Below are positions 23,242 to 57,713 of a stretch of DNA of 64,000 nucleotides, in pieces. Position 1 is the first letter of the stretch. Each line of letters opens with the position of its first letter. The notes beneath the pieces are model-generated. The model was not told the origin of the DNA and made no database searches. It saw nothing but the letters and a program-made list of their open reading frames with translations. The stretch is taken from sequence record NC_023568.1; one strand, given 5' to 3'. The translations under genes and the position numbers were made by a program.

Positions 23242-24126
23242 ATGCAGGTACGATGGACAGAAATGTTTTACAGCGTTCAAGGTGAAGGCAAATACACTGG
23301 TCAAGCTAGTTTATTCTTTCGCTTCTGGGGTTGTAATTTAGAATGTCACGGCTTCGGTCAAGAAGACCCGACGAACAAAGACACATGGGTTTTAGATTTC
23401 AAAGATTACGACCCGAAAGCAAACAACGTGACTTCAGTTGAAGATCTACCTGTATGGACTCGTGGTTGTGACTCTTCATACACGTGGGCTAAAAAGTATG
23501 CTCATCTTGCTTCTAAGTCTGAAGTACCAGACGTTTGCGAAGCAATGCTTGACAAACTGCCTAATCGAGAATGGGGAGAAATTCATTGGGTAATTACGGG
23601 CGGTGAGCCTATGATGAACCAATCACAGATCATCGAAATGATGAATTACTTCATCGAAATCGACAATTACCCAAAACATATCACGATTGAAACAAACGGT
23701 ACGCGAGATCTCAAGCCCGAATTTTCAGAACGTTGGGCATTGATTCAATGGAAAGCTCGTTCTGAGAAACCACAGTTGAGCTTCAGTGTATCGTTTAAGT
23801 TATTCAACGTAACAGGTGAAGTTGCAGAAAAAGCAATTAAGCCTAAAGTTGTTAACAAATATGCACGCATCGCAGACGTTTGGTTGAAACCAGTTGTCGT
23901 AGACAAGGAAGCGTGTTGGGACGAGCTTGATACAACAATTGCGTTGTATAAAGTAGAAAACAACTTACACAATGTTCCAGTGTATATCATGCCATGTGGT
24001 GCTACTCAAGAAGAGCAAGAGCAAGATGGTTATATGGCTTCAATTGCAGGGAAAGCATTGGAGCGTGGTTACAACGTTTCTGTTCGTGTACACGTATGGA
24101 TTTGGGGTAACGCGGTGGGCACATAA
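23242..24126 (+). CDS. queE: 7-carboxy-7-deazaguanine synthase (radical SAM)
   Basis: EMFYSVQGEG, CNLEC...CDS, ITGGEP, IETNGT, VRVHVWIWG. Confidence 0.9.
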   Translation: MQVRWTEMFYSVQGEGKYTGQASLFFRFWGCNLECHGFGQEDPTNKDTWVLDFKDYDPKANNVTSVEDLPVWTRGCDSSYTWAKKYAHLASKSEVPDVCEAMLDKLPNREWGEIHWVITGGEPMMNQSQIIEMMNYFIEIDNYPKHITIETNGTRDLKPEFSERWALIQWKARSEKPQLSFSVSFKLFNVTGEVAEKAIKPKVVNKYARIADVWLKPVVVDKEACWDELDTTIALYKVENNLHNVPVYIMPCGATQEEQEQDGYMASIAGKALERGYNVSVRVHVWIWGNAVGT

Positions 24127-42174: not shown

Positions 42175-43611
42175 TTAAAAGCTGTAGCGTTCGACGCCTA
42201 CAGTTTTCATCATGATCTTGATTGGCTCAAGCTCACCACCCAACAGTGAAGTCAAGATAGATGGGCTACAACCAGATACCAGTGCAGTACCCGCTTCACC
42301 AGCTTTAACCGGAACGTTGCCAAGACGACCACGAATGTTCCAGAAGACCAGTTGTGGCATTTCATAACCAGCACGTGCGTACATGGCTTTGATTGCATCG
42401 AAGTTCGCAGGTTCACCGCGACCGTACCAGCCACCGCCAGTGTTTGCTTGATCGAATTCCATGTCACTCATGATAAGCAACTTGGTTGGCATATCTTCTT
42501 GTGAAAGATTTGCACGCTTCGCACGCTCTAGCAGAACATCAAAGCACTTACCGATGTTCGTACTCATGTCTTCGCCTGAACGATTCATGTTATCAAGACG
42601 CTCTTTCAATGAGCTACCGCGCAACTGGTGGAAGTGCGGGTCGCTTGAGAACGAAATGAATTGATCTTTGAAGATGCCTTCATTGCGTTCAGCAACATAA
42701 ATCCCAAGAGACATTGCAACTTGCTTACAAGTCACACCTGAATGGTCTGTACCTGCGTTGATTGGCGTGCTCATAGAGCCAGACACGTCAACAACAGGGA
42801 TGATGCGCTCATCAGAACCTTCCATGTAGTTTGGCAGAGCTTTCCATTGCTCGTTCGCTACAGACGCATTACCGTGACTAACGCTCTTAACGACATCGTA
42901 TGGGAACAATGCGCCAGCGTTGATCTTCGCTTCACCTTTTTGAAGTGACTCGATGTAGCTTGTGTAACGAGCTGAAGCGTTACGACCGAATGCTTGTTGA
43001 TAACGAGCAGACGCTACAGAAGGCAATTTACCGAAGTCGATTGCATCCCATTCCTGAGCACACATTTTCTGTTCAACAGTGTCAGACAGAAGAGAAAGAA
43101 TCTTACGCCACTGCTTCGCAGTTACACCAAGAGACTTGATTGTGCGCTTGAATACGTGACCGTTTTTGCTGTTCTCGCGTGGGAACCACTTCGCAGCAAG
43201 ACCGTTCTTGTCGTTTACAATCGCGTTTGACCACATAGTGATCGCGTCTTTTTCTAGACTTGTGCCGAAAGCAGAAATCAAGTCATCGAAACGACCTAGT
43301 TCTGGAATTTTCGACATTACAGCACGAGCTACGTCAGGCTGCTCATTACAAAGTTTAGCGAAAATAGTACGGAAAGTACCACGTTCACCCGCACCACCGC
43401 GAACGTCACGAGACCATAGCAAGATGCGTGTCGCAAGTTCTGGGTTTTCTGCAAACGCACGACCGAACAGTGTTTTAGACTGATCGTTGCCACGCATAGC
43501 AGCAATACCGAAGAACAAGTTTAGACACTCGTTACCTGAAGTGCTGTGAGTAACTGCACCGTTTACTGTGCGTGAATCGTTTGTTTGCATTGCGTTCATA
43601 AATACTGACAT
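42175..43611 (-). CDS. Ro60-like TROVE/vWA protein (DUF2828 type)
   Basis: RDVRGGAGER, AAKWFPRE helical region; MIDAS VVDVSGSM, MSDMEFD, LVFWN. Confidence 0.8.
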   Translation of the reverse strand: MSVFMNAMQTNDSRTVNGAVTHSTSGNECLNLFFGIAAMRGNDQSKTLFGRAFAENPELATRILLWSRDVRGGAGERGTFRTIFAKLCNEQPDVARAVMSKIPELGRFDDLISAFGTSLEKDAITMWSNAIVNDKNGLAAKWFPRENSKNGHVFKRTIKSLGVTAKQWRKILSLLSDTVEQKMCAQEWDAIDFGKLPSVASARYQQAFGRNASARYTSYIESLQKGEAKINAGALFPYDVVKSVSHGNASVANEQWKALPNYMEGSDERIIPVVDVSGSMSTPINAGTDHSGVTCKQVAMSLGIYVAERNEGIFKDQFISFSSDPHFHQLRGSSLKERLDNMNRSGEDMSTNIGKCFDVLLERAKRANLSQEDMPTKLLIMSDMEFDQANTGGGWYGRGEPANFDAIKAMYARAGYEMPQLVFWNIRGRLGNVPVKAGEAGTALVSGCSPSILTSLLGGELEPIKIMMKTVGVERYSF

Positions 43612-43690
43612 TGTTCATTTCCTCATAATTAATTGCTGTAAAATGTCTTTGATGAAGTGATTATACGCGAATTTTAATGCGTGTAAACAC
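43607..43690 (-). promoter_or_regulatory. early promoter plus leader carrying the AG-N8-CAGCA module that pairs with the start codon
   Basis: GTTTAC-17-TATAAT; GACATT (43642-43647) complementary to AATGTC (43607-43612). Confidence 0.75.
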
Positions 43691-45727: not shown

Positions 45728-45755
45728 GATTGCTCACCTCTTAGTTAATAGAATA

Positions 45756-45801
45756 CGGGAGACACAGGAATCGAACCTATTGCCTTGACCACATATCTCC
45801 C
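45756..45801 (-). ncRNA. anticodon-less mini-tRNA
   Basis: GGGAGAT/GTCTCCC acceptor, TGT-GGTCAAG-GCA D-like arm, ATAGG-TTCGATT-CCTGT T arm; no encoded CCA. Confidence 0.7.
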
Positions 45802-45825
45802 ACTGAGAAGTTACGCCAATTCAGA

Positions 45826-46053
45826 TTAATGCGCTATGCTTTGTAAACGGCGCATACGCTCACGCTGCGATAACTCATCGAGATTGGGTTTATCAATCTC
45901 TTCGTCTTTCTCTGCGGCTTCTGCTTCCTTTTTAATCTTTTCAGCATTGGGACCAATGTTCTTCCAAAGAGGTGCGTTGCGCCAATTTTCATTATGCCCG
46001 TTACCCGAACCACGCCCTTCACGAGCATGAGACTTTTGGTGAATGTTCTTCAT
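45826..46053 (-). CDS. hypothetical charged protein
   Basis: TAATG coupling to upstream gene. Confidence 0.65.
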   Translation of the reverse strand: MKNIHQKSHAREGRGSGNGHNENWRNAPLWKNIGPNAEKIKKEAEAAEKDEEIDKPNLDELSQRERMRRLQSIAH

Positions 46054-50946: not shown

Positions 50947-51021
50947 TGGTGGACACGCAGGGAGTCGAACCCTATCTTCCTCATTGCAAGTGAGGCGCTT
51001 TCCCAATTAAGCTAACGGCCC
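50947..51021 (-). tRNA. tRNA-Ala(TGC), irregular acceptor stem
   Basis: loop CTTGCAA, G3.U70 present, lower acceptor mispaired or bulged. Confidence 0.8.
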
Positions 51022-51344: not shown

Positions 51345-51457
51345 GAGTGTTATTACTAGCGTCGTCCAGACCAGTGATACCAACACTGAAAGGGAATCGA
51401 ACCCTAAACATTTCTTTCCGATAAGAATATTAGTAAATTGTTTGCTGAAAACACTCT
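51345..51457 (-). ncRNA. YrlA-like circularly permuted tRNA mimic with the module
   Basis: GAGTGTT/AACACTC end helix; order T arm (TTCGATT), capped acceptor-like stem, GG-containing D-like loop. Confidence 0.75.
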
Positions 51458-51792: not shown

Positions 51793-51850
51793 AGTAATCC
51801 TTTTTGCTTTTTCCAAATAAAAGTTTTGTATTGTTTGCTGTAAGATTACT
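51793..51850 (-). ncRNA. 58-nt end-closed RNA with the module
   Basis: AGTAATC/GATTACT helix then TTA-CAGCAAA. Confidence 0.7.
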
Positions 51851-52255: not shown

Positions 52256-52265
52256 ATTATTCAAC

Positions 52266-52352
52266 AGCTTGCGTTCTTTGGTCTGTTTATCGCTGTCTGA
52301 ACTGAGTTCGTCGAGCGATCAATAGAGTAAGTTAAATTGCAGTATGCAAGCT
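52266..52352 (-). ncRNA. 87-nt end-closed RNA with the module
   Basis: AGCTTGC/GCAAGCT helix then ATA-CTGCAAT; internal ATCGCT/AGCGAT stem. Confidence 0.72.
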
Positions 52353-52357
52353 AAAAC

Positions 52358-53831: not shown

Positions 53832-53958
53832 TGAATGCTCTCTTGAAATAAAAATTAAAATTTGTTTTGTTTCTTTATAGTACTTATAACACTAAATCTG
53901 ACGATTTGCGGTATTTTCGCAGAAAATTGAAAAAAATTATCAATTTTCTGCGATTTTA

Positions 53959-54221: not shown

Positions 54222-54337
54222 TGGTAGTCGGGGCTGGATTCGAACCAGCGACCACGTGCTTAACAGGCAATTGAAGGAGTGCTGGAGCGATACTTGTCAG
54301 TATCATTCTTCGTGCTCTACCACTGAGCTACCCGACT
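54222..54337 (-). ncRNA. tRNA body (Asn-like loop retained) with the module inserted in the anticodon arm
   Basis: AGTCGGG/CCCGACT, D and T arms, ACCA; insert GATACT-GACA-AGTATC-GCTC-CAGCA. Confidence 0.8.
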
Positions 54338-54342
54338 ATGAA

Positions 54343-54864
54343 TTATTTAACTTTGAATTTCAAATTTCGATATTCAAAGTTTCGTTTGTCTTTTTTACTG
54401 TAATACGTATCCCAATCAATAGAAACAGGACAGTTCTTACTACCCACACGAGATAAGAAAACGTCGTGAGTGTCTTTGTAAGCTTCTCTGAGAGACTTTA
54501 CTTGTTTCTCATGATGAGTTATGTACTCAGCACACGCTTTGTTGTACTCAGCTTTAGAGAAGCGGTCATCGCCCGTGAAATTACCGTTTAGATACGGTCG
54601 AATAACACGAACACGCTCTTTAGACCATCCCATACTAAAACTATTTTCAATTCGACCGATGATTTCACCAGTCTTTTTACATCGTGCAAGAATAACCCAG
54701 CAACGCTCTCTTCGAAAGTCTTTTCGAGTGAATACATTGATGTACTTATCAACATACTCTTGATAGCGTTCGTTATATATTTTACGAAGTCTGCTACGTT
54801 CTTCAATCGTCATAGCAGCACGTTCTTCTTTAGAGAACGCCTCAACGAACTTCAATGGTTTCAT
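54343..54864 (-). CDS. hypothetical protein
   Basis: GAGG RBS before ATG 54864. Confidence 0.7.
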   Translation of the reverse strand: MKPLKFVEAFSKEERAAMTIEERSRLRKIYNERYQEYVDKYINVFTRKDFRRERCWVILARCKKTGEIIGRIENSFSMGWSKERVRVIRPYLNGNFTGDDRFSKAEYNKACAEYITHHEKQVKSLREAYKDTHDVFLSRVGSKNCPVSIDWDTYYSKKDKRNFEYRNLKFKVK

Positions 54865-54877
54865 TATAATTTCCTCT

Positions 54878-54974
54878 TGGCGCCGCTCGTGTGAATCGAA
54901 CACACGTCAAACACAACACCTCTTCAACCCAATTAGAGTTTCGAAGTAAGAGCTAATCAGCATTTCAGAGCAGC
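54878..54974 (-). ncRNA. tRNA-like RNA with CCA and non-canonical D/anticodon region
   Basis: GCTGCTC/GAGCGGC acceptor, GTGTG-TTCGATT-CACAC T arm, GCCA end. Confidence 0.65.
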
Positions 54975-55121
54975 CGAGCGTTATTTCTACATACAAGACT
55001 TCGACATCTCACATGCACTTTCTACTCGGTCCCAGTGATTCGGTACCAACGTAGGTTGCGAACCTACGTCTGCACTAATGTTGGGAATACACTGTGTATT
55101 GTACGCCAGTTAGCGGCATTT

Positions 55122-55352
55122 TTAAAGATAGCTGTCAAAAACATCATCACTGACTTCTTCAATCTTGATGTCAGCGTAACATTCGTTCGCAACTGCTCGA
55201 ATTTCATCTATTGAAACTGTACCCGAGTACAAAACAACAGAGTCGTTCGGAATCACAACATCACACATGTATCTGTCAAACATTTCAGTTCTGAAATCGT
55301 AATCGACGTAGCAAGCGTGCATTGATGTGATAACTAGCAATTTATGTGACAT
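55122..55352 (-). CDS. hypothetical early protein
   Basis: TTGACA-17-TAGTAT promoter at about 55383-55411; GAGG RBS. Confidence 0.7.
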   Translation of the reverse strand: MSHKLLVITSMHACYVDYDFRTEMFDRYMCDVVIPNDSVVLYSGTVSIDEIRAVANECYADIKIEEVSDDVFDSYL

Positions 55353-55431
55353 AATGTTTTCCTCGTGTAGTTGATAATGTGTATACTACACGTTGATGAA
55401 ACGTCTGTCAACAACTTTTTTCAATTTATTT

Positions 55432-55509
55432 TGGTGACCCCAACAGGACTCGAACCTGTAACCTACCGATTATGAGTCGGTTGCTCTAACCGTGTTGAGC
55501 TATAGGGCC
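55432..55509 (-). tRNA. tRNA with CAT anticodon (Ile2- or Met-like)
   Basis: GGCCCTA acceptor, loop CTCATAA, CCA. Confidence 0.88.
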
Positions 55510-55510
55510 A

Positions 55511-55879
55511 TCATTTCTCTAGAAATCGACCAACTTTCGCAGCGAAGATGTTTGCTTCTTCTGTAATACGAGCAGTCGATTTAATTTGATGAAATGCGTC
55601 TTGTTGATGCAGCAAATCGAGCTTATCTGCACATTTCATCAATTCTTTTATAGTTTGCATAATCTCAATATTATCAATCTGACTTGTATCAGGGTGATAA
55701 TTTAGATTGTCTAATATCGGCAGAACTTGTTGATAGCAACCCATGCCAATGAAGTTTATCATAAGTCTATACTGCATTTCAACAGCAAATGTACAATATT
55801 TTCGAAGATTGCGCTTTACAATCTCACAACGATGCAATATACAATCAAGTTCGTCATTTATGTCATTAAACTTATTCAT
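55511..55879 (-). CDS. hypothetical protein
   Basis: GAGGG RBS before ATG 55879. Confidence 0.7.
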   Translation of the reverse strand: MNKFNDINDELDCILHRCEIVKRNLRKYCTFAVEMQYRLMINFIGMGCYQQVLPILDNLNYHPDTSQIDNIEIMQTIKELMKCADKLDLLHQQDAFHQIKSTARITEEANIFAAKVGRFLEK

Positions 55880-55893
55880 AAACCCTCGAAAAT

Positions 55894-56017
55894 TGGTGGA
55901 GAGTACGGGATTTGAACCACGTGACAAAAAGATTTACCTAGTTATTAAGGTTGCAGCATGAATGCTTGTCAGTATTCTTTAACATTCTTTTGCTCTACCA
56001 GACTGAGCTAACTCTCC
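55894..56017 (-). ncRNA. tRNA body with the module replacing the anticodon loop
   Basis: GGAGAGT/ACTCTCC, ACCA; GAATACT-GACA-AGCATTC-ATG-CTGCAA. Confidence 0.8.
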
Positions 56018-56024
56018 AGAATTT

Positions 56025-56140
56025 GAAGGTGAAGTGCAGGACTCGAACCTGCGACCTCCGGCGTGCATGTGAATGCAGAATGAAATCTTATCAGACTTCG
56101 TTTTTTGGCCGGCGTTCTAACCTACTGAACTAACTTCACC
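56025..56140 (-). ncRNA. Asp-like tRNA body with the module replacing the anticodon loop
   Basis: GGTGAAGT/ACTTCACC, CCGGC/GCCGG stem; GAAGTCT-GATA-AGATTTC-ATT-CTGCA; no CCA. Confidence 0.78.
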
Positions 56141-56150
56141 AATGTAAAAA

Positions 56151-56287
56151 CATATTGAGCAGGGTGCAGGATTCGAACCTGCGTCACGATCTTGGAAATG
56201 ATATGCTAAATTGATTGCAGAATACAAACTTAACAGCTTGCGTTTATGCTACGTGTGCTAGCCACTACACCAACCCTGCTCAATATG
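56151..56287 (-). ncRNA. Gly-like tRNA body with the module, inside a 15-bp terminal stem
   Basis: GCAAGCT-GTTA-AGTTTGT-ATT-CTGCAA; residual TTTCCAA; T arm GCAGG-TTCGAAT-CCTGC. Confidence 0.78.
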
Positions 56288-56330
56288 TTCTTGAGAGTGC
56301 TTGTGATTAACCACAAGCACCAAAAATCCT

Positions 56331-56519
56331 CTAGTTATATTTGCCTTAGCTAATCAAAACACAATCTGGAATCGTGCGCTTTAATTACGGGATGAATGAC
56401 CCGTTCGCATGTGATTAGCGCAAAAGTATGAATGCGCACCTTTTCTTCTTCAATGTCCAAGGCAAAAAGGACGATGAATACTAGTGCGAGAAGATATACA
56501 ATCAAATTGTCCACCTCGC
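56331..56519 (-). ncRNA. multi-helix structured RNA
   Basis: TTTGCCTT/AAGGCAAA, CTAATCA/TGATTAG, ACGGG/CCCGT, GCGAG/CTCGC pairings. Confidence 0.5.
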
Positions 56520-56528
56520 TTTGTTAGT

Positions 56529-56675
56529 GAGAGTACATTGGTCGAGTGTAACGGAATCGAACCGTTCCCACGATCTCCCTATGATATGCGTAAATTGGTT
56601 GCTGAATATAATCATGTCTGATTACAGTATGCTACGTGTGCTGCCACTACACCAACACTCGACCAATGTACTCTC
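56529..56675 (-). ncRNA. tRNA body with the module, inside a 21-bp terminal stem
   Basis: CGAGTGT/ACACTCG + ACCA; TGTAATCA-GACA-TGATTAT-ATT-CAGCAA; paralogue of 56151-56287. Confidence 0.8.
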
Positions 56676-56676
56676 G

Positions 56677-56758
56677 ATATTTTAAATGTGCGCTACTTGC
56701 ACGCCAGAACGTATACTGGCTCCATGTATTCATTGCGGCTAACGCACATTTAAAATAT
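56677..56758 (-). ncRNA. long-stem RNA
   Basis: 16-bp ATATTTTAAATGTGCG inverted repeat enclosing a GCCAG/CTGGC hairpin. Confidence 0.5.
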
Positions 56759-56760
56759 TA

Positions 56761-56864
56761 CTCATCTTCAGAGAAGAGGCAGAAACGATGAGTTTAGTCT
56801 GCTTAATCAATATTGTTCATCTTCAATAAGAGGCGAGAACGATGAACTTAGCTCGCTTAATCAA
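56761..56864 (-). repeat. two tandem H-type pseudoknot units (55-nt period)
   Basis: five compensatory base-pair changes between copies. Confidence 0.8.
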
Positions 56865-56872
56865 CTGTGTTA

Positions 56873-56993
56873 ATCTTAACATCATTTCAGTGTAAGTCAA
56901 CAACTTTTTTCAAATATTTCATCGAGTTGAAAGTTTGTGTTCTGTCTCTCGACTCGATGAAATACATTCTACATGCTTTTCAGAATAAGTCAA
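56873..56993 (-). promoter_or_regulatory. two early-type promoters heading the tRNA/ncRNA operon
   Basis: AAAGTTGTTGACT...TG.TAAGAT and AAAGTTGTTGACT...TG.TAGAAT; 13-bp leader hairpin between them. Confidence 0.75.
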
Positions 56994-57010
56994 CAACTTT
57001 TTGAAAGTTT

Positions 57011-57265
57011 TTATACTGAAAGAATGATACCGCTTTCTGTCTCACCTCGTTCAAGCGCAGCGTGCTTGATTTGAAGCTGAGATACAGCTTGTTGAAGCTC
57101 AGTGATAGCTTTATCGTAAAGTTTGTTGTTCTCTTTAAGTAAAGCAATCTGATCGGTCTGCATACCGATGATATACGTCAATAATACAACGTTCTCTTCA
57201 GTAGTTAGAGTTTCGGGAGCTTCATTGTACTTCTTTAATACTGCTTCAGTAGATAAATCAGTCAT
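57011..57265 (-). CDS. coiled-coil hypothetical protein
   Basis: ORF track; start probably MTDLS. Confidence 0.65.
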   Translation of the reverse strand: MTDLSTEAVLKKYNEAPETLTTEENVVLLTYIIGMQTDQIALLKENNKLYDKAITELQQAVSQLQIKHAALERGETESGIILSV

Positions 57266-57713
57266 TACTATCAACCCAATTTAAATCAAGTGGTTCAAGA
57301 TATTCATCAACAAGCCGAACTTCAGCGTTGACGGGCATAGGTGTGATCGCGTCGTCATAAGACAACGTAACGTGAGGGGTATAGTCAGGGTAGTCGTGAG
57401 TACCACCGATAGAGATAAGATCATCGTGACGTTCTACAAGTTCTGGACATACCATCTTAGCAACAACTGCATATTTGCCGTCTTGCGTTTTCCAACAGTC
57501 GATATGTTCAACAGTAGCAACGAAAGTGGTATCGACAACAGGTACATCAATTTGCTTACGACTATAAAGCACAGTCACGTGAAATTTATCTGGTTCTAAC
57601 GGATTTTTTAGACGAAGCGTTTTCTGCAATCGAACTAACTCTTGCTTACTCGCCTCGTCTAATCTGATACCAACGTAAGTTCCCTGACTTTCAAGGAACT
57701 TAGATAGTTTCAT
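57258..57713 (-). CDS. acb1: anti-CBASS 2H phosphodiesterase (T4 gp57B)
   Basis: two HxT motifs (FHVTVLYSR, THDYPDYTPHVTLSY), EYLEPLDLNW; synteny 57B-57A-1-3. Confidence 0.9.
   Translation of the reverse strand: MKLSKFLESQGTYVGIRLDEASKQELVRLQKTLRLKNPLEPDKFHVTVLYSRKQIDVPVVDTTFVATVEHIDCWKTQDGKYAVVAKMVCPELVERHDDLISIGGTHDYPDYTPHVTLSYDDAITPMPVNAEVRLVDEYLEPLDLNWVDSND

What the first reader, a model, noticed from the sequence alone, without database searches (positions are those of the whole stretch)
54222..56675. Five tRNA bodies whose anticodon loop is replaced by the protein-binding module
Seen: 54222-54337, 55894-56017, 56025-56140, 56151-56287 and 56529-56675 keep acceptor, D and T arms (three with encoded CCA), but each anticodon arm opens into a 6-8 bp helix capped by G(A/T)(C/T)A and followed by CWGCA. 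The bodies derive from different tRNAs (Asn-, Asp-, Gly-like), so the module was installed repeatedly or kept through divergence. Two have 15- and 21-bp flanking stems suited to RNase III. Standard annotation would call them pseudo-tRNAs, but the shared covarying insert argues for function. Inference: tRNA-shaped adaptors, possibly aminoacylated, that present the Ro-like protein to ribosomes, synthetases or tRNA-targeting defences.
Basis: partly seen in the sequence, partly recalled or inferred. Interest (0 to 1): 0.88.

Follow-up and report, generated by a model that had tools for sequence, protein, structure and literature searches.

The report
Phage tRNAs carrying a Ro-protein handle
Five conserved tRNA-shaped RNAs of a Vibrio phage, so far annotated as pseudo-tRNAs, carry a covarying 40-50-base insert in the anticodon arm whose motif also marks small RNAs encoded beside a Ro60-shaped phage protein, so they look like a new, widespread kind of Y-RNA-like partner built on a complete tRNA.

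Summary
The window is Vibrio phage VH7D (KVP40-like). All five elements are real, lie on the minus strand, and have acceptor, D and T arms. Each carries a 7-bp hairpin, a G-first tetraloop and, exactly 10 nt later, C-N-G-C-A. All 7 hairpin pairs covary among related phages. A model of this module hits only these five sites in 64 kb.

One correction: the module is not always a loop replacement. E1 and E5, and 45 of 67 elements analysed overall, keep a canonical anticodon hairpin. The module is a 41-54-nt side branch in the 5' strand of the anticodon stem.

The "Ro-like" protein (DUF2828) models as a Ro60 fold. In 78 environmental loci, CAGCAA-bearing stem RNAs lie directly downstream of this gene. 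Eighty environmental tRNA chimeras with the same module exist. Sixteen lie within the fetched stretch (at most 14.5 kb) of a DUF2828 gene, all on the same strand, against 2 of 79 control tRNA loci.

Best reading: these are insert-bearing tRNAs that act as Y-RNA-like partners of a Ro60-fold protein. That makes them a new variant of the Ro60/YrlA theme. Binding, charging and absence of splicing are untested.

The parts
54222..54337 (-). E1: complete tRNA body with encoded ACCA. A 41-nt insert follows position 28, and an Asn-type anticodon hairpin is retained (UGC-CUGUUAA-GCA).
   Evidence: Rfam tRNA 49.8 bits with a 54-nt insert. Sequence. Orthologues in KVP40, nt-1, VS2, D482, D479 and Aeh1. 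Excision geometry.
55894..56017 (-). E2: tRNA body with encoded CCA. An intact 5-bp anticodon stem (AAAGA/UCUUU) encloses the module plus a second covarying hairpin.
   Evidence: Rfam tRNA 50.2 bits. Seven orthologues.
56025..56140 (-). E3: tRNA body without encoded CCA. An intact 5-bp stem (CCGGC/GCCGG) encloses the module plus the hairpin UGCAU-UCAC-AUGCA.
   Evidence: Rfam tRNA 56.3 bits. Fold z-score -3.5.
56151..56287 (-). E4: tRNA body (core about 56159-56279) inside an 8-bp extension of the acceptor stem, giving 15 bp in all. Carries the module plus the hairpin AUC-AUUUCCAA-GAU.
   Evidence: Fold z-score -4.8. Covariation in the acceptor stem, T arm, module and flanking stem.
56529..56675 (-). 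E5: paralogue of E4 (core 56543-56661) inside a 14-bp extension, giving 21 bp in all. ACCA is paired within the stem. Carries the module plus a 7-nt-loop hairpin AUC-AUAGGGA-GAU.
   Evidence: Fold z-score -7.2. Covariation. Excision geometry.
54275..54307 (-). Module of E1: 7-bp hairpin, GACA loop, then N-U-N-CAGCA.
   Evidence: R1 37.6 bits, E=5e-6.
55947..55979 (-). Module of E2.
   Evidence: R1 40.8 bits.
56069..56101 (-). Module of E3.
   Evidence: R1 41.5 bits.
56211..56243 (-). Module of E4.
   Evidence: R1 41.7 bits.
56595..56627 (-). Module of E5.
   Evidence: R1 37.9 bits.
42175..43611 (-). Gene for the 478-aa Ro60-fold protein (Pfam DUF2828 + DUF7788, MIDAS-like DVSGSM), the proposed binding partner.
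   Evidence: Pfam. PHROG 850 'RNA-binding protein'. AlphaFold2 pLDDT 76.8. The top 8 Foldseek hits are all Ro60/TROVE, TM 0.48-0.59.
43629..43652 (-). Leader of the Ro-like gene: AAAGACAUUUUACAGCAAUUAAUU just before the Shine-Dalgarno sequence. It carries the same motif and may be an autoregulatory site.
   Evidence: Conserved in KVP40, and open Y-like RNAs sit in the same place in environmental loci.
51793..51850 (-). Y-like RNA c: 9-bp terminal stem followed by A-CAGCAA-ACAAUAC. This matches the consensus of RNAs found beside DUF2828 genes elsewhere.
   Evidence: One compensatory pair in KVP40.
51345..51456 (-). Y-like RNA d: terminal stem, UU-CAGCAA-ACAAUUU, and an internal T-arm-like hairpin GGGUUCGAUUCCC.
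   Evidence: Compensatory changes in KVP40 and phi-Grn1. No Rfam YrlA hit.
52265..52353 (-). Y-like RNA b: 8-bp terminal stem followed by AUA-CUGCAA-UUUAAC.
   Evidence: Conserved, but no covariation seen.
56677..56758 (-). Y-like RNA a (weak candidate): 16-bp stem followed by UUAG-CCGCAA.
   Evidence: The motif reads CCGAAA in KVP40, and the RNA carries an insert in relatives.

Best explanation
E1-E5 are stable non-coding RNAs made from the phage tRNA operon. Each is a tRNA, complete or nearly complete, that carries a protein-binding side module in its anticodon arm. The module is a 7-8-bp helix of free sequence closed by a G-first tetraloop, followed on the 3' side by the single-stranded motif N-U-N-C-N-G-C-A(A).

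I propose that the phage's Ro60-fold protein (DUF2828, window 42175-43611) binds this helix-plus-strand element. On this view the same protein binds the small stem RNAs that carry the motif with the helix closed by the RNA ends instead of a loop. E1-E5 are therefore the functional counterpart of bacterial YrlA Y RNAs, with one module for the Ro-type protein and one tRNA module. They are circularly permuted relative to YrlA: the tRNA keeps its own 5' and 3' ends (often with CCA), and the protein-binding helix is the closed one.

The tRNA part would give the RNA RNase P and CCA maturation and stability. It would also dock the RNP onto factors that read tRNA shape, the CCA end or the anticodon loop.

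Shown: the structures, their conservation and covariation, the Ro60 fold of the protein model, and the genomic linkage of motif and gene. Inferred: binding, lack of splicing, and the downstream role. The most likely role is tRNA surveillance or repair, or decoying of tRNA-directed host factors.
For: (1) The module is under structural selection. All 7 pairs have compensatory changes, the geometry is fixed, and G(loop), U(-2), C, G, C and A are invariant.

(2) The module is specific. There are five R1 hits in the window and none elsewhere, and none in 675 kb of control tRNA loci.

(3) The protein has a Ro60 fold. The top 8 Foldseek hits are all Ro60/TROVE over the full length, at E of 3e-7 to 1e-5.

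(4) The motif travels with the gene. In 78 IMG/VR DUF2828 loci there are 143 sense-strand CAGCAA sites within 500 nt downstream, against about 0.07 per 250 nt elsewhere and 3 on the antisense strand. These occur as 2-3 tandem stem RNAs in 28 dereplicated groups. The same arrangement is seen in a FelixO1-like phage and in mycobacteriophage Snenia, where the middle RNA is a weak YrlA match with E=4e-7.

(5) There are 80 environmental tRNA chimeras with the module. Sixteen of these loci hold a DUF2828 gene within the fetched stretch, against 2 of 79 control loci (Fisher p=7e-4). All 17 element-gene pairs are on the same strand, and 9 lie within 1.4 kb.

(6) Aeh1 has two chimeras 2.7 kb downstream of its DUF2828 gene.

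(7) There is precedent. Ro60 partners with tRNA-like Y RNAs encoded next to it (PMC4201824), and a phage Ro60 binds phage-encoded Y-like RNAs (PMC12135203).
Against: No binding data exist. In VH7D the gene lies 10.6-13 kb from the elements. DUF2828 genes tend to sit near tRNA arrays anyway, so part of the linkage could be synteny, although the control loci argue against this. The sequence motif is short, and a weight matrix of it alone has no power above chance. The 16 linked loci include about 8 close relatives of one 'Tyr' lineage, leaving roughly 9 independent lineages. The 78 best DUF2828 loci carry no closed module within 6 kb, so the chimera form is restricted to some lineages. The insert can be excised cleanly on paper, which fits an intron as well. 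The model's TM of about 0.55-0.59 shows the fold, not the RNA-binding mode.
Confidence: 0.6

Rival explanations
1. The inserts are introns or another kind of intervening sequence. They are cut out and the halves joined to give ordinary tRNAs. The Ro-like protein would then be, at most, a maturation factor.
For: In 45 of 67 elements a canonical anticodon loop (U33, R37) sits at the canonical distance from the T stem. In 40 of those 45, the bases right after position 26 complete an exact 5-bp stem once a 41-54-nt insert is removed, against 6-18 of 45 at slid offsets. E1 minus its insert is a perfect 76-nt tRNA-Asn(GUU). CCA is encoded in 44 of 83 elements, and 71 of 83 have a perfect 7-bp acceptor stem.
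Against: No splicing endonuclease for such sites is known in bacteria or their phages, and the insert is far too small for a group I or II intron (general knowledge). E2 and E3 have no anticodon loop whatever is removed. Near-identical bodies carry different anticodons: L123 has GUC, L129 UCU and L133 GUU. VH7D already has a normal tRNA-Asn. The same motif occurs in RNAs that have no tRNA body, which an intron role does not explain.
Confidence: 0.12
2. The module is recognised by some other factor, such as a host or phage RNase, a different phage protein, or an RNA-RNA contact. Its proximity to DUF2828 genes would then only reflect shared residence near tRNA arrays.
For: In VH7D the gene and the elements are more than 10 kb apart. 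DUF2828 genes border tRNA arrays in FelixO1-like phages and Aeh1. Sixty-four of 80 chimera loci show no DUF2828 gene within the fetched stretch.
Against: Ordinary phage tRNA loci carry the gene in only 2 of 79 cases. The CAGCAA RNAs peak sharply within 0-500 nt of the gene's stop codon on the sense strand, including in loci where the RNAs follow the stop codon directly. Open versions of the motif lie in the gene's own leader.
Confidence: 0.15
3. They are working tRNAs that are charged and used in translation or another aminoacyl-transfer reaction with the insert still in place. The side arm would serve only as a regulatory or protective appendage.
For: Bodies are intact, CCA ends are retained and anticodon loops are canonical in most family members.
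Against: A roughly 35-nt branch on the anticodon stem should clash with the decoding site of the 30S subunit (general knowledge, not tested). E2, E3 and E4 lack a 7-nt anticodon loop. Anticodons change freely on the same body.
Confidence: 0.08
4. They are decaying tRNA pseudogenes, as current annotation implies.
For: KVP40, phi-pp2 and Aeh1 annotations and papers list them as pseudo or low-score tRNAs.
Against: They are conserved across phages that are only about 78% identical, and in Aeh1. Compensatory changes occur in every helix and some bases are invariant. Eighty further examples have intact arms.
Confidence: 0.02

Closest known systems
YrlA / bacterial Y RNAs bound by Rsr (Ro60), Rfam RF02553 (Chen et al. 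2014, PMC4201824)
   Same: Both are two-module ncRNAs, with a site for a Ro60-fold protein and a tRNA-like domain with D arm, T arm and acceptor stem. Both are encoded on the same strand as the protein gene, often in several copies. M. smegmatis YrlA is even opened by RNase P and receives CCA.
   Different: The topology is permuted. In YrlA the RNA ends form the Ro-binding stem and the acceptor stem is closed by a loop. Here the ends are the tRNA's own and the protein-binding helix is closed. The motif is NUN-CNGCA(A) rather than GNCGAAN0-1G. The protein belongs to Pfam DUF2828/DUF7788, not TROVE. Most family members keep a true anticodon hairpin. The Rfam model gives only spurious partial hits (32 and 20 bits against a gathering score of 69) that straddle neighbouring elements.
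Phage Ro60 with phage-encoded Y-like RNAs (Thermus phage phiLo, PMC12135203; mycobacteriophage ET08, PMC4201824)
   Same: A phage-encoded Ro60-fold protein has partner RNAs encoded next to the gene. The phiLo structure 9kop is among the top structural matches of the window's protein.
   Different: Those proteins are TROVE-family, with CGAA-motif stem-bulge RNAs. No tRNA with its own ends or anticodon loop is involved.
Intron-containing tRNAs (archaeal and eukaryal bulge-helix-bulge introns, including non-canonical positions; bacterial group I introns in anticodon loops)
   Same: An intervening sequence sits in the anticodon arm of an otherwise canonical tRNA, and clean removal restores the cloverleaf.
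   Different: The host domain has no known endonuclease for this. The size and lack of a catalytic core exclude self-splicing. The insert carries a conserved motif shared with free-standing RNAs (general knowledge). A bulge-helix-bulge fold was not tested rigorously.
T4 species 1 and 2 RNAs (rnaC, rnaD)
   Same: These are stable RNAs of unknown function co-transcribed with the phage tRNA cluster. rnaC has a T arm and an acceptor-like stem.
   Different: Neither has a module hit or CNGCAA motif in the required context. No DUF2828 gene or R1 module hit lies in the 6 kb of the T4 tRNA region examined.
tmRNA
   Same: A tRNA-like domain with a CCA end is joined to a second functional domain and works with a dedicated protein.
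   Different: There is no tag reading frame or pseudoknots. ARAGORN finds no tmRNA. In tmRNA the insert replaces the anticodon arm and D arm in a different way.

Membership tests
tRNA (Rfam RF00005) | Cloverleaf with a 7-bp acceptor stem, D arm and T arm carrying the conserved tertiary bases. | tested here: met
   E1-E3 exceed the gathering score. The arms of E4 and E5 are supported by covariation, although Rfam and ARAGORN do not call them.
tRNA (Rfam RF00005) | A 5-bp anticodon stem with a 7-nt loop (U33, purine 37), contiguous in the RNA. | tested here: not met
   All five carry a 41-54-nt insert. A canonical loop survives only in E1 and E5. E4 has 8 nt, and E2 and E3 have none.
tRNA (Rfam RF00005) | Aminoacylation and decoding. 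| not testable with these tools
   Needs acid-urea northern blots and polysome analysis.
YrlA (Rfam RF02553) | Match to the family covariance model at or above 69 bits. | tested here: not met
   Only 32.0- and 20-bit partial matches to model positions 27-81, spanning the T arm of one element and the D arm of the next. There is no hit for Y-like RNA d.
YrlA (Rfam RF02553) | GNCGAAN0-1G motif near the 5' end, in the Ro-binding stem formed by the RNA ends. | tested here: not met
   The motif is absent as a conserved feature. The conserved element is NUN-CNGCA(A), 3' of a closed hairpin.
YrlA (Rfam RF02553) | Encoded within about 4 kb of the Ro60 gene and on the same strand. | tested here: inconclusive
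   In VH7D the strand is the same but the distance is 10.6-13 kb. In Aeh1 it is 2.7 kb. In 9 environmental pairs it is 1.4 kb or less, and all 17 pairs share the strand.
Y RNA in the functional sense (ncRNA bound by a Ro60-type protein) | Physical association with the Ro60-type protein. | not testable with these tools
   Only genomic linkage and a shared motif are available.
Ro60 / TROVE protein family (for the proposed partner) | Sequence match to Pfam TROVE. | tested here: not met
   Pfam gives DUF2828 and DUF7788 only. A profile search of PDB sequences reaches the phiLo TROVE protein only at E=0.71.
Ro60 / TROVE protein family (for the proposed partner) | Helical-repeat ring plus a C-terminal vWA domain with a MIDAS motif. 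| tested here: met
   The AlphaFold2 model has pLDDT 76.8 and pTM 0.74. The top 8 Foldseek matches are Ro60 structures over 513-563 aligned columns. The motif DVSGSM is invariant.
Intron-containing tRNA | Removal of the insert restores a canonical tRNA. | tested here: inconclusive
   Met on paper for E1, E5 and 40 of 45 relatives with canonical loops. Not met for E2, E3 and E4.
Intron-containing tRNA | A splicing mechanism: a self-splicing core, or a bulge-helix-bulge motif with its endonuclease. | not tested
   The size excludes group I and II introns. No systematic search was made for a bulge-helix-bulge fold or an endonuclease gene.

The most novel reading that the evidence does not exclude
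These are 'handled tRNAs'. A widespread phage RNP would consist of a Ro60-fold protein gripping a side arm on the anticodon stem of an otherwise genuine tRNA, leaving the CCA end and a real anticodon loop exposed. The displayed anticodons are mostly G-U-N (Tyr 16, Asp 7, Asn 3, His 1 of 41), and they switch freely on identical bodies. This would fit a programmable decoy, sensor or repair platform aimed at host factors that read specific anticodon loops, such as anticodon nucleases of defence systems, queuosine insertion or synthetases.
Probability: 0.2. Interest if true: 0.92.

Novelty: new variant of a known kind. Interest (0 to 1): 0.8.

Why it matters
If the reading is right, three things follow.

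- A set of "pseudo-tRNAs" annotated in KVP40-type and Aeh1-type phages, together with 78 other chimera loci in environmental viral contigs, would become a functional RNA class.
- The large DUF2828 family would gain a predicted ligand and a place beside Ro60. The family occurs in 711 phage records, including FelixO1-like, Listeria, Staphylococcus, Campylobacter and mycobacteriophages.
- The open question of what the tRNA-like half of bacterial Y RNAs is for would become easier to test. Here the tRNA half is complete, has its own ends and displays identifiable anticodons.

The work also gives annotators a simple signature: a hairpin, 10 nt, then CNGCA in the anticodon arm. The system can be studied in a harmless laboratory host, using phage nt-1 on Vibrio natriegens.

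Tried and rejected
- **Rfam YrlA membership.** Only artefactual partial hits across neighbouring elements, and none for Y-like RNA d.
- **Rfam search of DUF2828-adjacent RNAs.** No family matched.
- **Single-sequence AlphaFold2.** Unusable, pLDDT 37.5. It was repeated with an alignment.
- **PDB sequence searches.** These gave only designed armadillo-repeat proteins and a non-significant TROVE hit.
- **T4 rnaC and rnaD as homologues.** Neither carries the module.
- **Generic scan for 'open' helices next to CNGCAA.** About 10 chance hits per window, so it served only as a pointer.
- **Weight matrix of the motif alone.** Scores were within the range of shuffled sequence. Only the clustering of hits on the minus strand of the tRNA region was informative.
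- **ARAGORN on all single-deletion variants.** Too permissive to count as a test. It was replaced by the strict positional test.
- **Y-like RNA 'a'.** Downgraded, because KVP40 has CCGAAA at the motif.
- **Pairing of the GC in CNGCA with an upstream GC (RNAalifold, E4/E5).** Invariant and broken in D479, so not adopted.
- **The KVP40 genome paper.** Could not be read.
- **Supplementary phage tables of Chen et al. 2014.** Not held in the library.
- **One script call produced nothing**.


Full report
**Identity and context.** The window is Vibrio phage VH7D (a KVP40-like Schizotequatrovirus), record positions 62001-126000 at 100% identity. The finding lies at the promoter-proximal end of a minus-strand tRNA operon. 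ARAGORN tRNAs between 48.7 and 55.5 kb, none of them among the five elements. The operon sits downstream of gene 1, 57A and 57B; 57B is an Acb1-type phosphodiesterase. KVP40's record annotates three of the five as tRNA-Pseudo-3, -4 and -5. The phi-Grn1 record calls all five as 113-122-nt tRNAs or pseudo-tRNAs. The papers on phi-pp2 (which also covers KVP40) and Aeh1 treat such genes as pseudo or low-score tRNAs.

**The observation.** On the minus strand each element has a 7-bp acceptor stem, a D arm and a T arm.
- Rfam's tRNA model passes its curated threshold for E1, E2 and E3, skipping 54, 48 and 44 nt in the anticodon region.
- E4 and E5 are not called by Rfam. In an alignment of 13 orthologues and paralogues, their acceptor stem (4 of 7 pairs), T stem (4 of 5) and module hairpin (6 of 6) carry compensatory changes.
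- E1, E2 and E5 encode CCA.
- The acceptor stems of E4 and E5 continue into 8- and 14-bp extensions, giving 15 and 21 bp in all. The E4 extension shows compensatory changes among orthologues.
- Every element has a 7-8-bp hairpin with loop GACA, GACA, GAUA, GUUA or GACA, followed by CAGCA or CUGCA.

**Constraint on the module.** Orthologues were collected from KVP40, phi-Grn1, nt-1, VS2, K566, D482, F86, 1.081.O and D479, down to about 71-78% identity. In 24 distinct modules the geometry is fixed: a 4-nt loop beginning with an invariant G, then 10 nt, then C-N-G-C-A, with an invariant U two bases before the C. All seven helix pairs show changes on both sides. In total 95.8% of cells are paired, against 35-47% when the partner is slid and 67% in shuffles. 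The covariance model R1, built from these modules, finds the following:
- exactly the five sites in the 64-kb window (37.6-41.7 bits), with nothing else below E=1;
- five sites in D479 and two in Aeromonas phage Aeh1;
- none in the T4 tRNA region, in a FelixO1-like phage or in mycobacteriophage Snenia;
- none at E<=0.1 in 675 kb of ordinary phage tRNA loci.

The feature is therefore real, specific and selected.

**A correction to the anatomy.** The module does not always replace the anticodon loop.
- In E2 and E3 an intact 5-bp anticodon stem encloses the module, and no anticodon-like loop remains.
- In E1 the module is followed by UGC-CUGUUAA-GCA. Deleting the 41 nt after position 28 would leave a perfect tRNA-Asn(GUU).
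- E5 likewise keeps AUC-AUAGGGA-GAU, completed by an outer CG/CG pair.
- E4 has an 8-nt loop.

**The wider family.** An exact-pattern scan of IMG/VR, requiring the T loop, a 20-50-nt gap and the module, returned 80 loci. These include KVP40, VH7D, Aeh1, phiAS5 and PX29, plus many large environmental contigs.
- 79 of 85 modules have at least 5 of 7 helix pairs.
- 71 of 83 have a perfect 7-bp acceptor stem, and 44 of 83 encode CCA.
- R1, trained only on Vibrio phages, recovers 42 of them at E<=0.01.
- 41 of 65 distinct elements keep a hairpin with a 7-nt loop, U33 and a purine at position 37, against 0.12 expected per element from shuffles.
- In 45 of 67 elements that loop sits at the canonical distance from the T stem. 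In 40 of those 45, the bases directly after position 26 complete a 5-bp stem once a 41-54-nt insert is removed, against 6-18 of 45 at slid offsets.

The general architecture is thus a canonical tRNA with a side branch inserted in the 5' strand of the anticodon stem. The displayed anticodons are mostly Tyr, Asp, Asn, Glu and Gly, and near-identical bodies carry different anticodons.

**The protein.** The ORF at 42175-43611 (minus strand, 478 aa) matches Pfam DUF2828 and DUF7788 and PHROG 850, 'RNA-binding protein'. It does not match TROVE. Sequence searches of the PDB give nothing significant. An AlphaFold2 model built with 50 homologues has pLDDT 76.8 and pTM 0.74. Its eight best structural matches are all Ro60 proteins: Xenopus and human Ro60, Deinococcus Rsr and Thermus phage phiLo. 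These align over the full length with TM 0.48-0.59 and E of 3e-7 to 1e-5. Only isolated vWA domains follow. 'Ro-like' is therefore supported at the level of fold. The family is large, with 711 phage records across FelixO1-like, Aeromonas, Campylobacter, Listeria, Staphylococcus, Enterococcus, Bacillus and mycobacteriophages; some are annotated 'Ro-like RNA binding protein'.

**Linking motif and protein.**
- In mycobacteriophage Snenia, three tandem stem RNAs lie directly after the DUF2828 gene. Each has ...GGAC(N)/(N)GUCCAG stems followed by ACAGCAA. The middle one is a weak Rfam YrlA match (39 bits, E=4e-7) with a T arm, a closed acceptor-like stem and a D arm.
- In a FelixO1-like Salmonella phage, two stem RNAs with UUG-CAGCAA and AUU-CAGCAA lie between the first tRNAs right after the gene.
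- In 78 IMG/VR loci found with the protein, the hexamer CAGCAA occurs 143 times on the sense strand within 500 nt downstream of the gene. The background is about 0.07 per 250 nt, and there are 3 antisense occurrences.
- In 28 dereplicated groups, nearly all show 2-3 tandem RNAs of the form stem-UUA-CAGCAA-ACAAUAC. Rfam has no family for these.
- The window itself holds such RNAs between its tRNAs: c at 51793-51850, d at 51345-51456 with an internal T-arm-like hairpin, and b at 52265-52353. It also has the motif in the leader of the Ro-like gene, conserved in KVP40. Many environmental loci have an open version immediately upstream of the gene's start.
- Locally the two versions are equivalent. 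In both, a helix end is followed on the 3' side by N-U-N-C-N-G-C-A-A. The far end of the helix is closed either by the RNA termini ('open', Y-RNA-like) or by a tetraloop ('closed', in the tRNA chimeras).

**Direct linkage of the chimeras.** Sixteen of the 80 chimera loci contain a DUF2828 gene within the fetched stretch of at most 14.5 kb. All 17 element-gene pairs are on the same strand, and nine lie within 1.4 kb. A control scan for ordinary tRNAs with a common D arm gave 2 of 79 loci with the gene (Fisher p=7e-4). The 16 loci are not all independent, since about half belong to one 'Tyr' lineage, but at least nine distinct lineages are represented. In VH7D the gene is 10.6-13 kb from the elements on the same strand. 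In Aeh1 two chimeras lie 2.7 kb downstream of the gene.

**Interpretation.** The best-supported reading is that E1-E5 are Y-RNA-like partners of a Ro60-fold protein, built on complete tRNAs. This parallels bacterial YrlA, which combines a Ro60 site with a tRNA-like domain and is modified or processed by tRNA enzymes (PMC4201824). It also parallels phage phiLo Ro60 with its Y-like RNAs (PMC12135203). It differs in four respects: topology (a circular permutation), motif, protein family, and the retained anticodon hairpin.

It is not a member of Rfam YrlA, because both the model and the defining motif were tested and not met. Binding itself, the fate of the insert, and any role at ribosomes, synthetases or defence nucleases remain untested. 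The clean-excision geometry keeps a splicing rival alive. Against that rival stand four points: no known machinery exists in bacteria or their phages, E2 and E3 would not yield a tRNA, anticodons switch on constant bodies, and the motif also occurs in RNAs without a tRNA body.

**Novelty.** No paper in the searchable library connects DUF2828 with partner RNAs, or describes tRNAs with this insert. [quoted passage not shown] I rate this a new variant of a known kind (Ro60-type protein plus a tRNA-mimicking Y RNA). It appears to be widespread and comes with a testable mechanism.

Noticed in passing
window 54878-55125 (-): A 248-nt non-coding stretch between two small ORFs folds with a 6-bp acceptor-like stem formed by its ends, a T arm (CGUGUG-UUCGAUU-CACACG) and a 3' GCCA (z-score -2.65). 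It is tmRNA-like in layout, but ARAGORN and Rfam do not call it and it has no CNGCAA module.
   Followed up: partly
window 45752-45830 (-): A short T-arm plus acceptor-like minihelix (GGGAGA...AUAGGUUCGAUUCCUGUGUCUCCC) lies in an intergenic gap about 2 kb from the Ro-like gene.
   Followed up: no
window 50950-51021 (-): Rfam calls a tRNA here (44.9 bits) that ARAGORN misses. It corresponds to KVP40 tRNA-Pseudo-1 and has no module.
   Followed up: no
window 57258-57713 (-): The gene 57B homologue just upstream of the elements is an Acb1-type anti-CBASS 2H phosphodiesterase (Pfam E=8e-46). Many records annotate it as 'RNA ligase'.
   Followed up: partly
L014 (Aeromonas phage Aeh1) 23930-24045: A tRNA-like RNA closed by a 13-bp stem has one D arm and two consecutive T arms (AACGGUUCGAUUCCGUU and CACUGGUUCGAAUCCAGU). 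It lies directly upstream of Aeh1's two module-bearing chimeras.
   Followed up: no
L014 5690-5794 and 9387-9471: Aeh1 has a 105-nt 'tRNA-Glu' with a long extended anticodon arm, and a tRNA-Asn flanked by an extended closing stem. Long flanking stems are therefore not peculiar to the chimeras.
   Followed up: no
L123, L129, L133 (IMG/VR): Nearly identical chimera bodies display different anticodons (GUC, UCU, GUU) in the same UUCC-AUNNNAA-GGAA hairpin. Across the family, G-U-N anticodons (Tyr, Asp, Asn, His) make up 27 of 41, though this count is not corrected for relatedness.
   Followed up: partly
window 56780-57000 (-): Upstream of E5 lie two copies of AAAGUUGUUGACUUA...(promoter-like TTGACT) and two tandem units of about 50 nt (GAUUAAGC..CUAA..UCAUCGUU..GCCUCUU..GAAGAUGA). 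They are probably early promoters and leader repeats of the RNA operon.
   Followed up: no
window 53900-53955 (-): A 12-bp hairpin (GCAGAAAAUUGA/UCAAUUUUCUGC) is followed 7 nt later by CCGCAA. It lies between a small ORF and the tRNA-Pro genes, and could be a further, atypical motif copy.
   Followed up: no
window 23242-24126 (+): The record annotates a QueE-like radical-SAM gene (7-deazaguanine pathway). This is noted only because the retained anticodons in the chimera family are mostly those of queuosine-type tRNAs. No link was tested.
   Followed up: no
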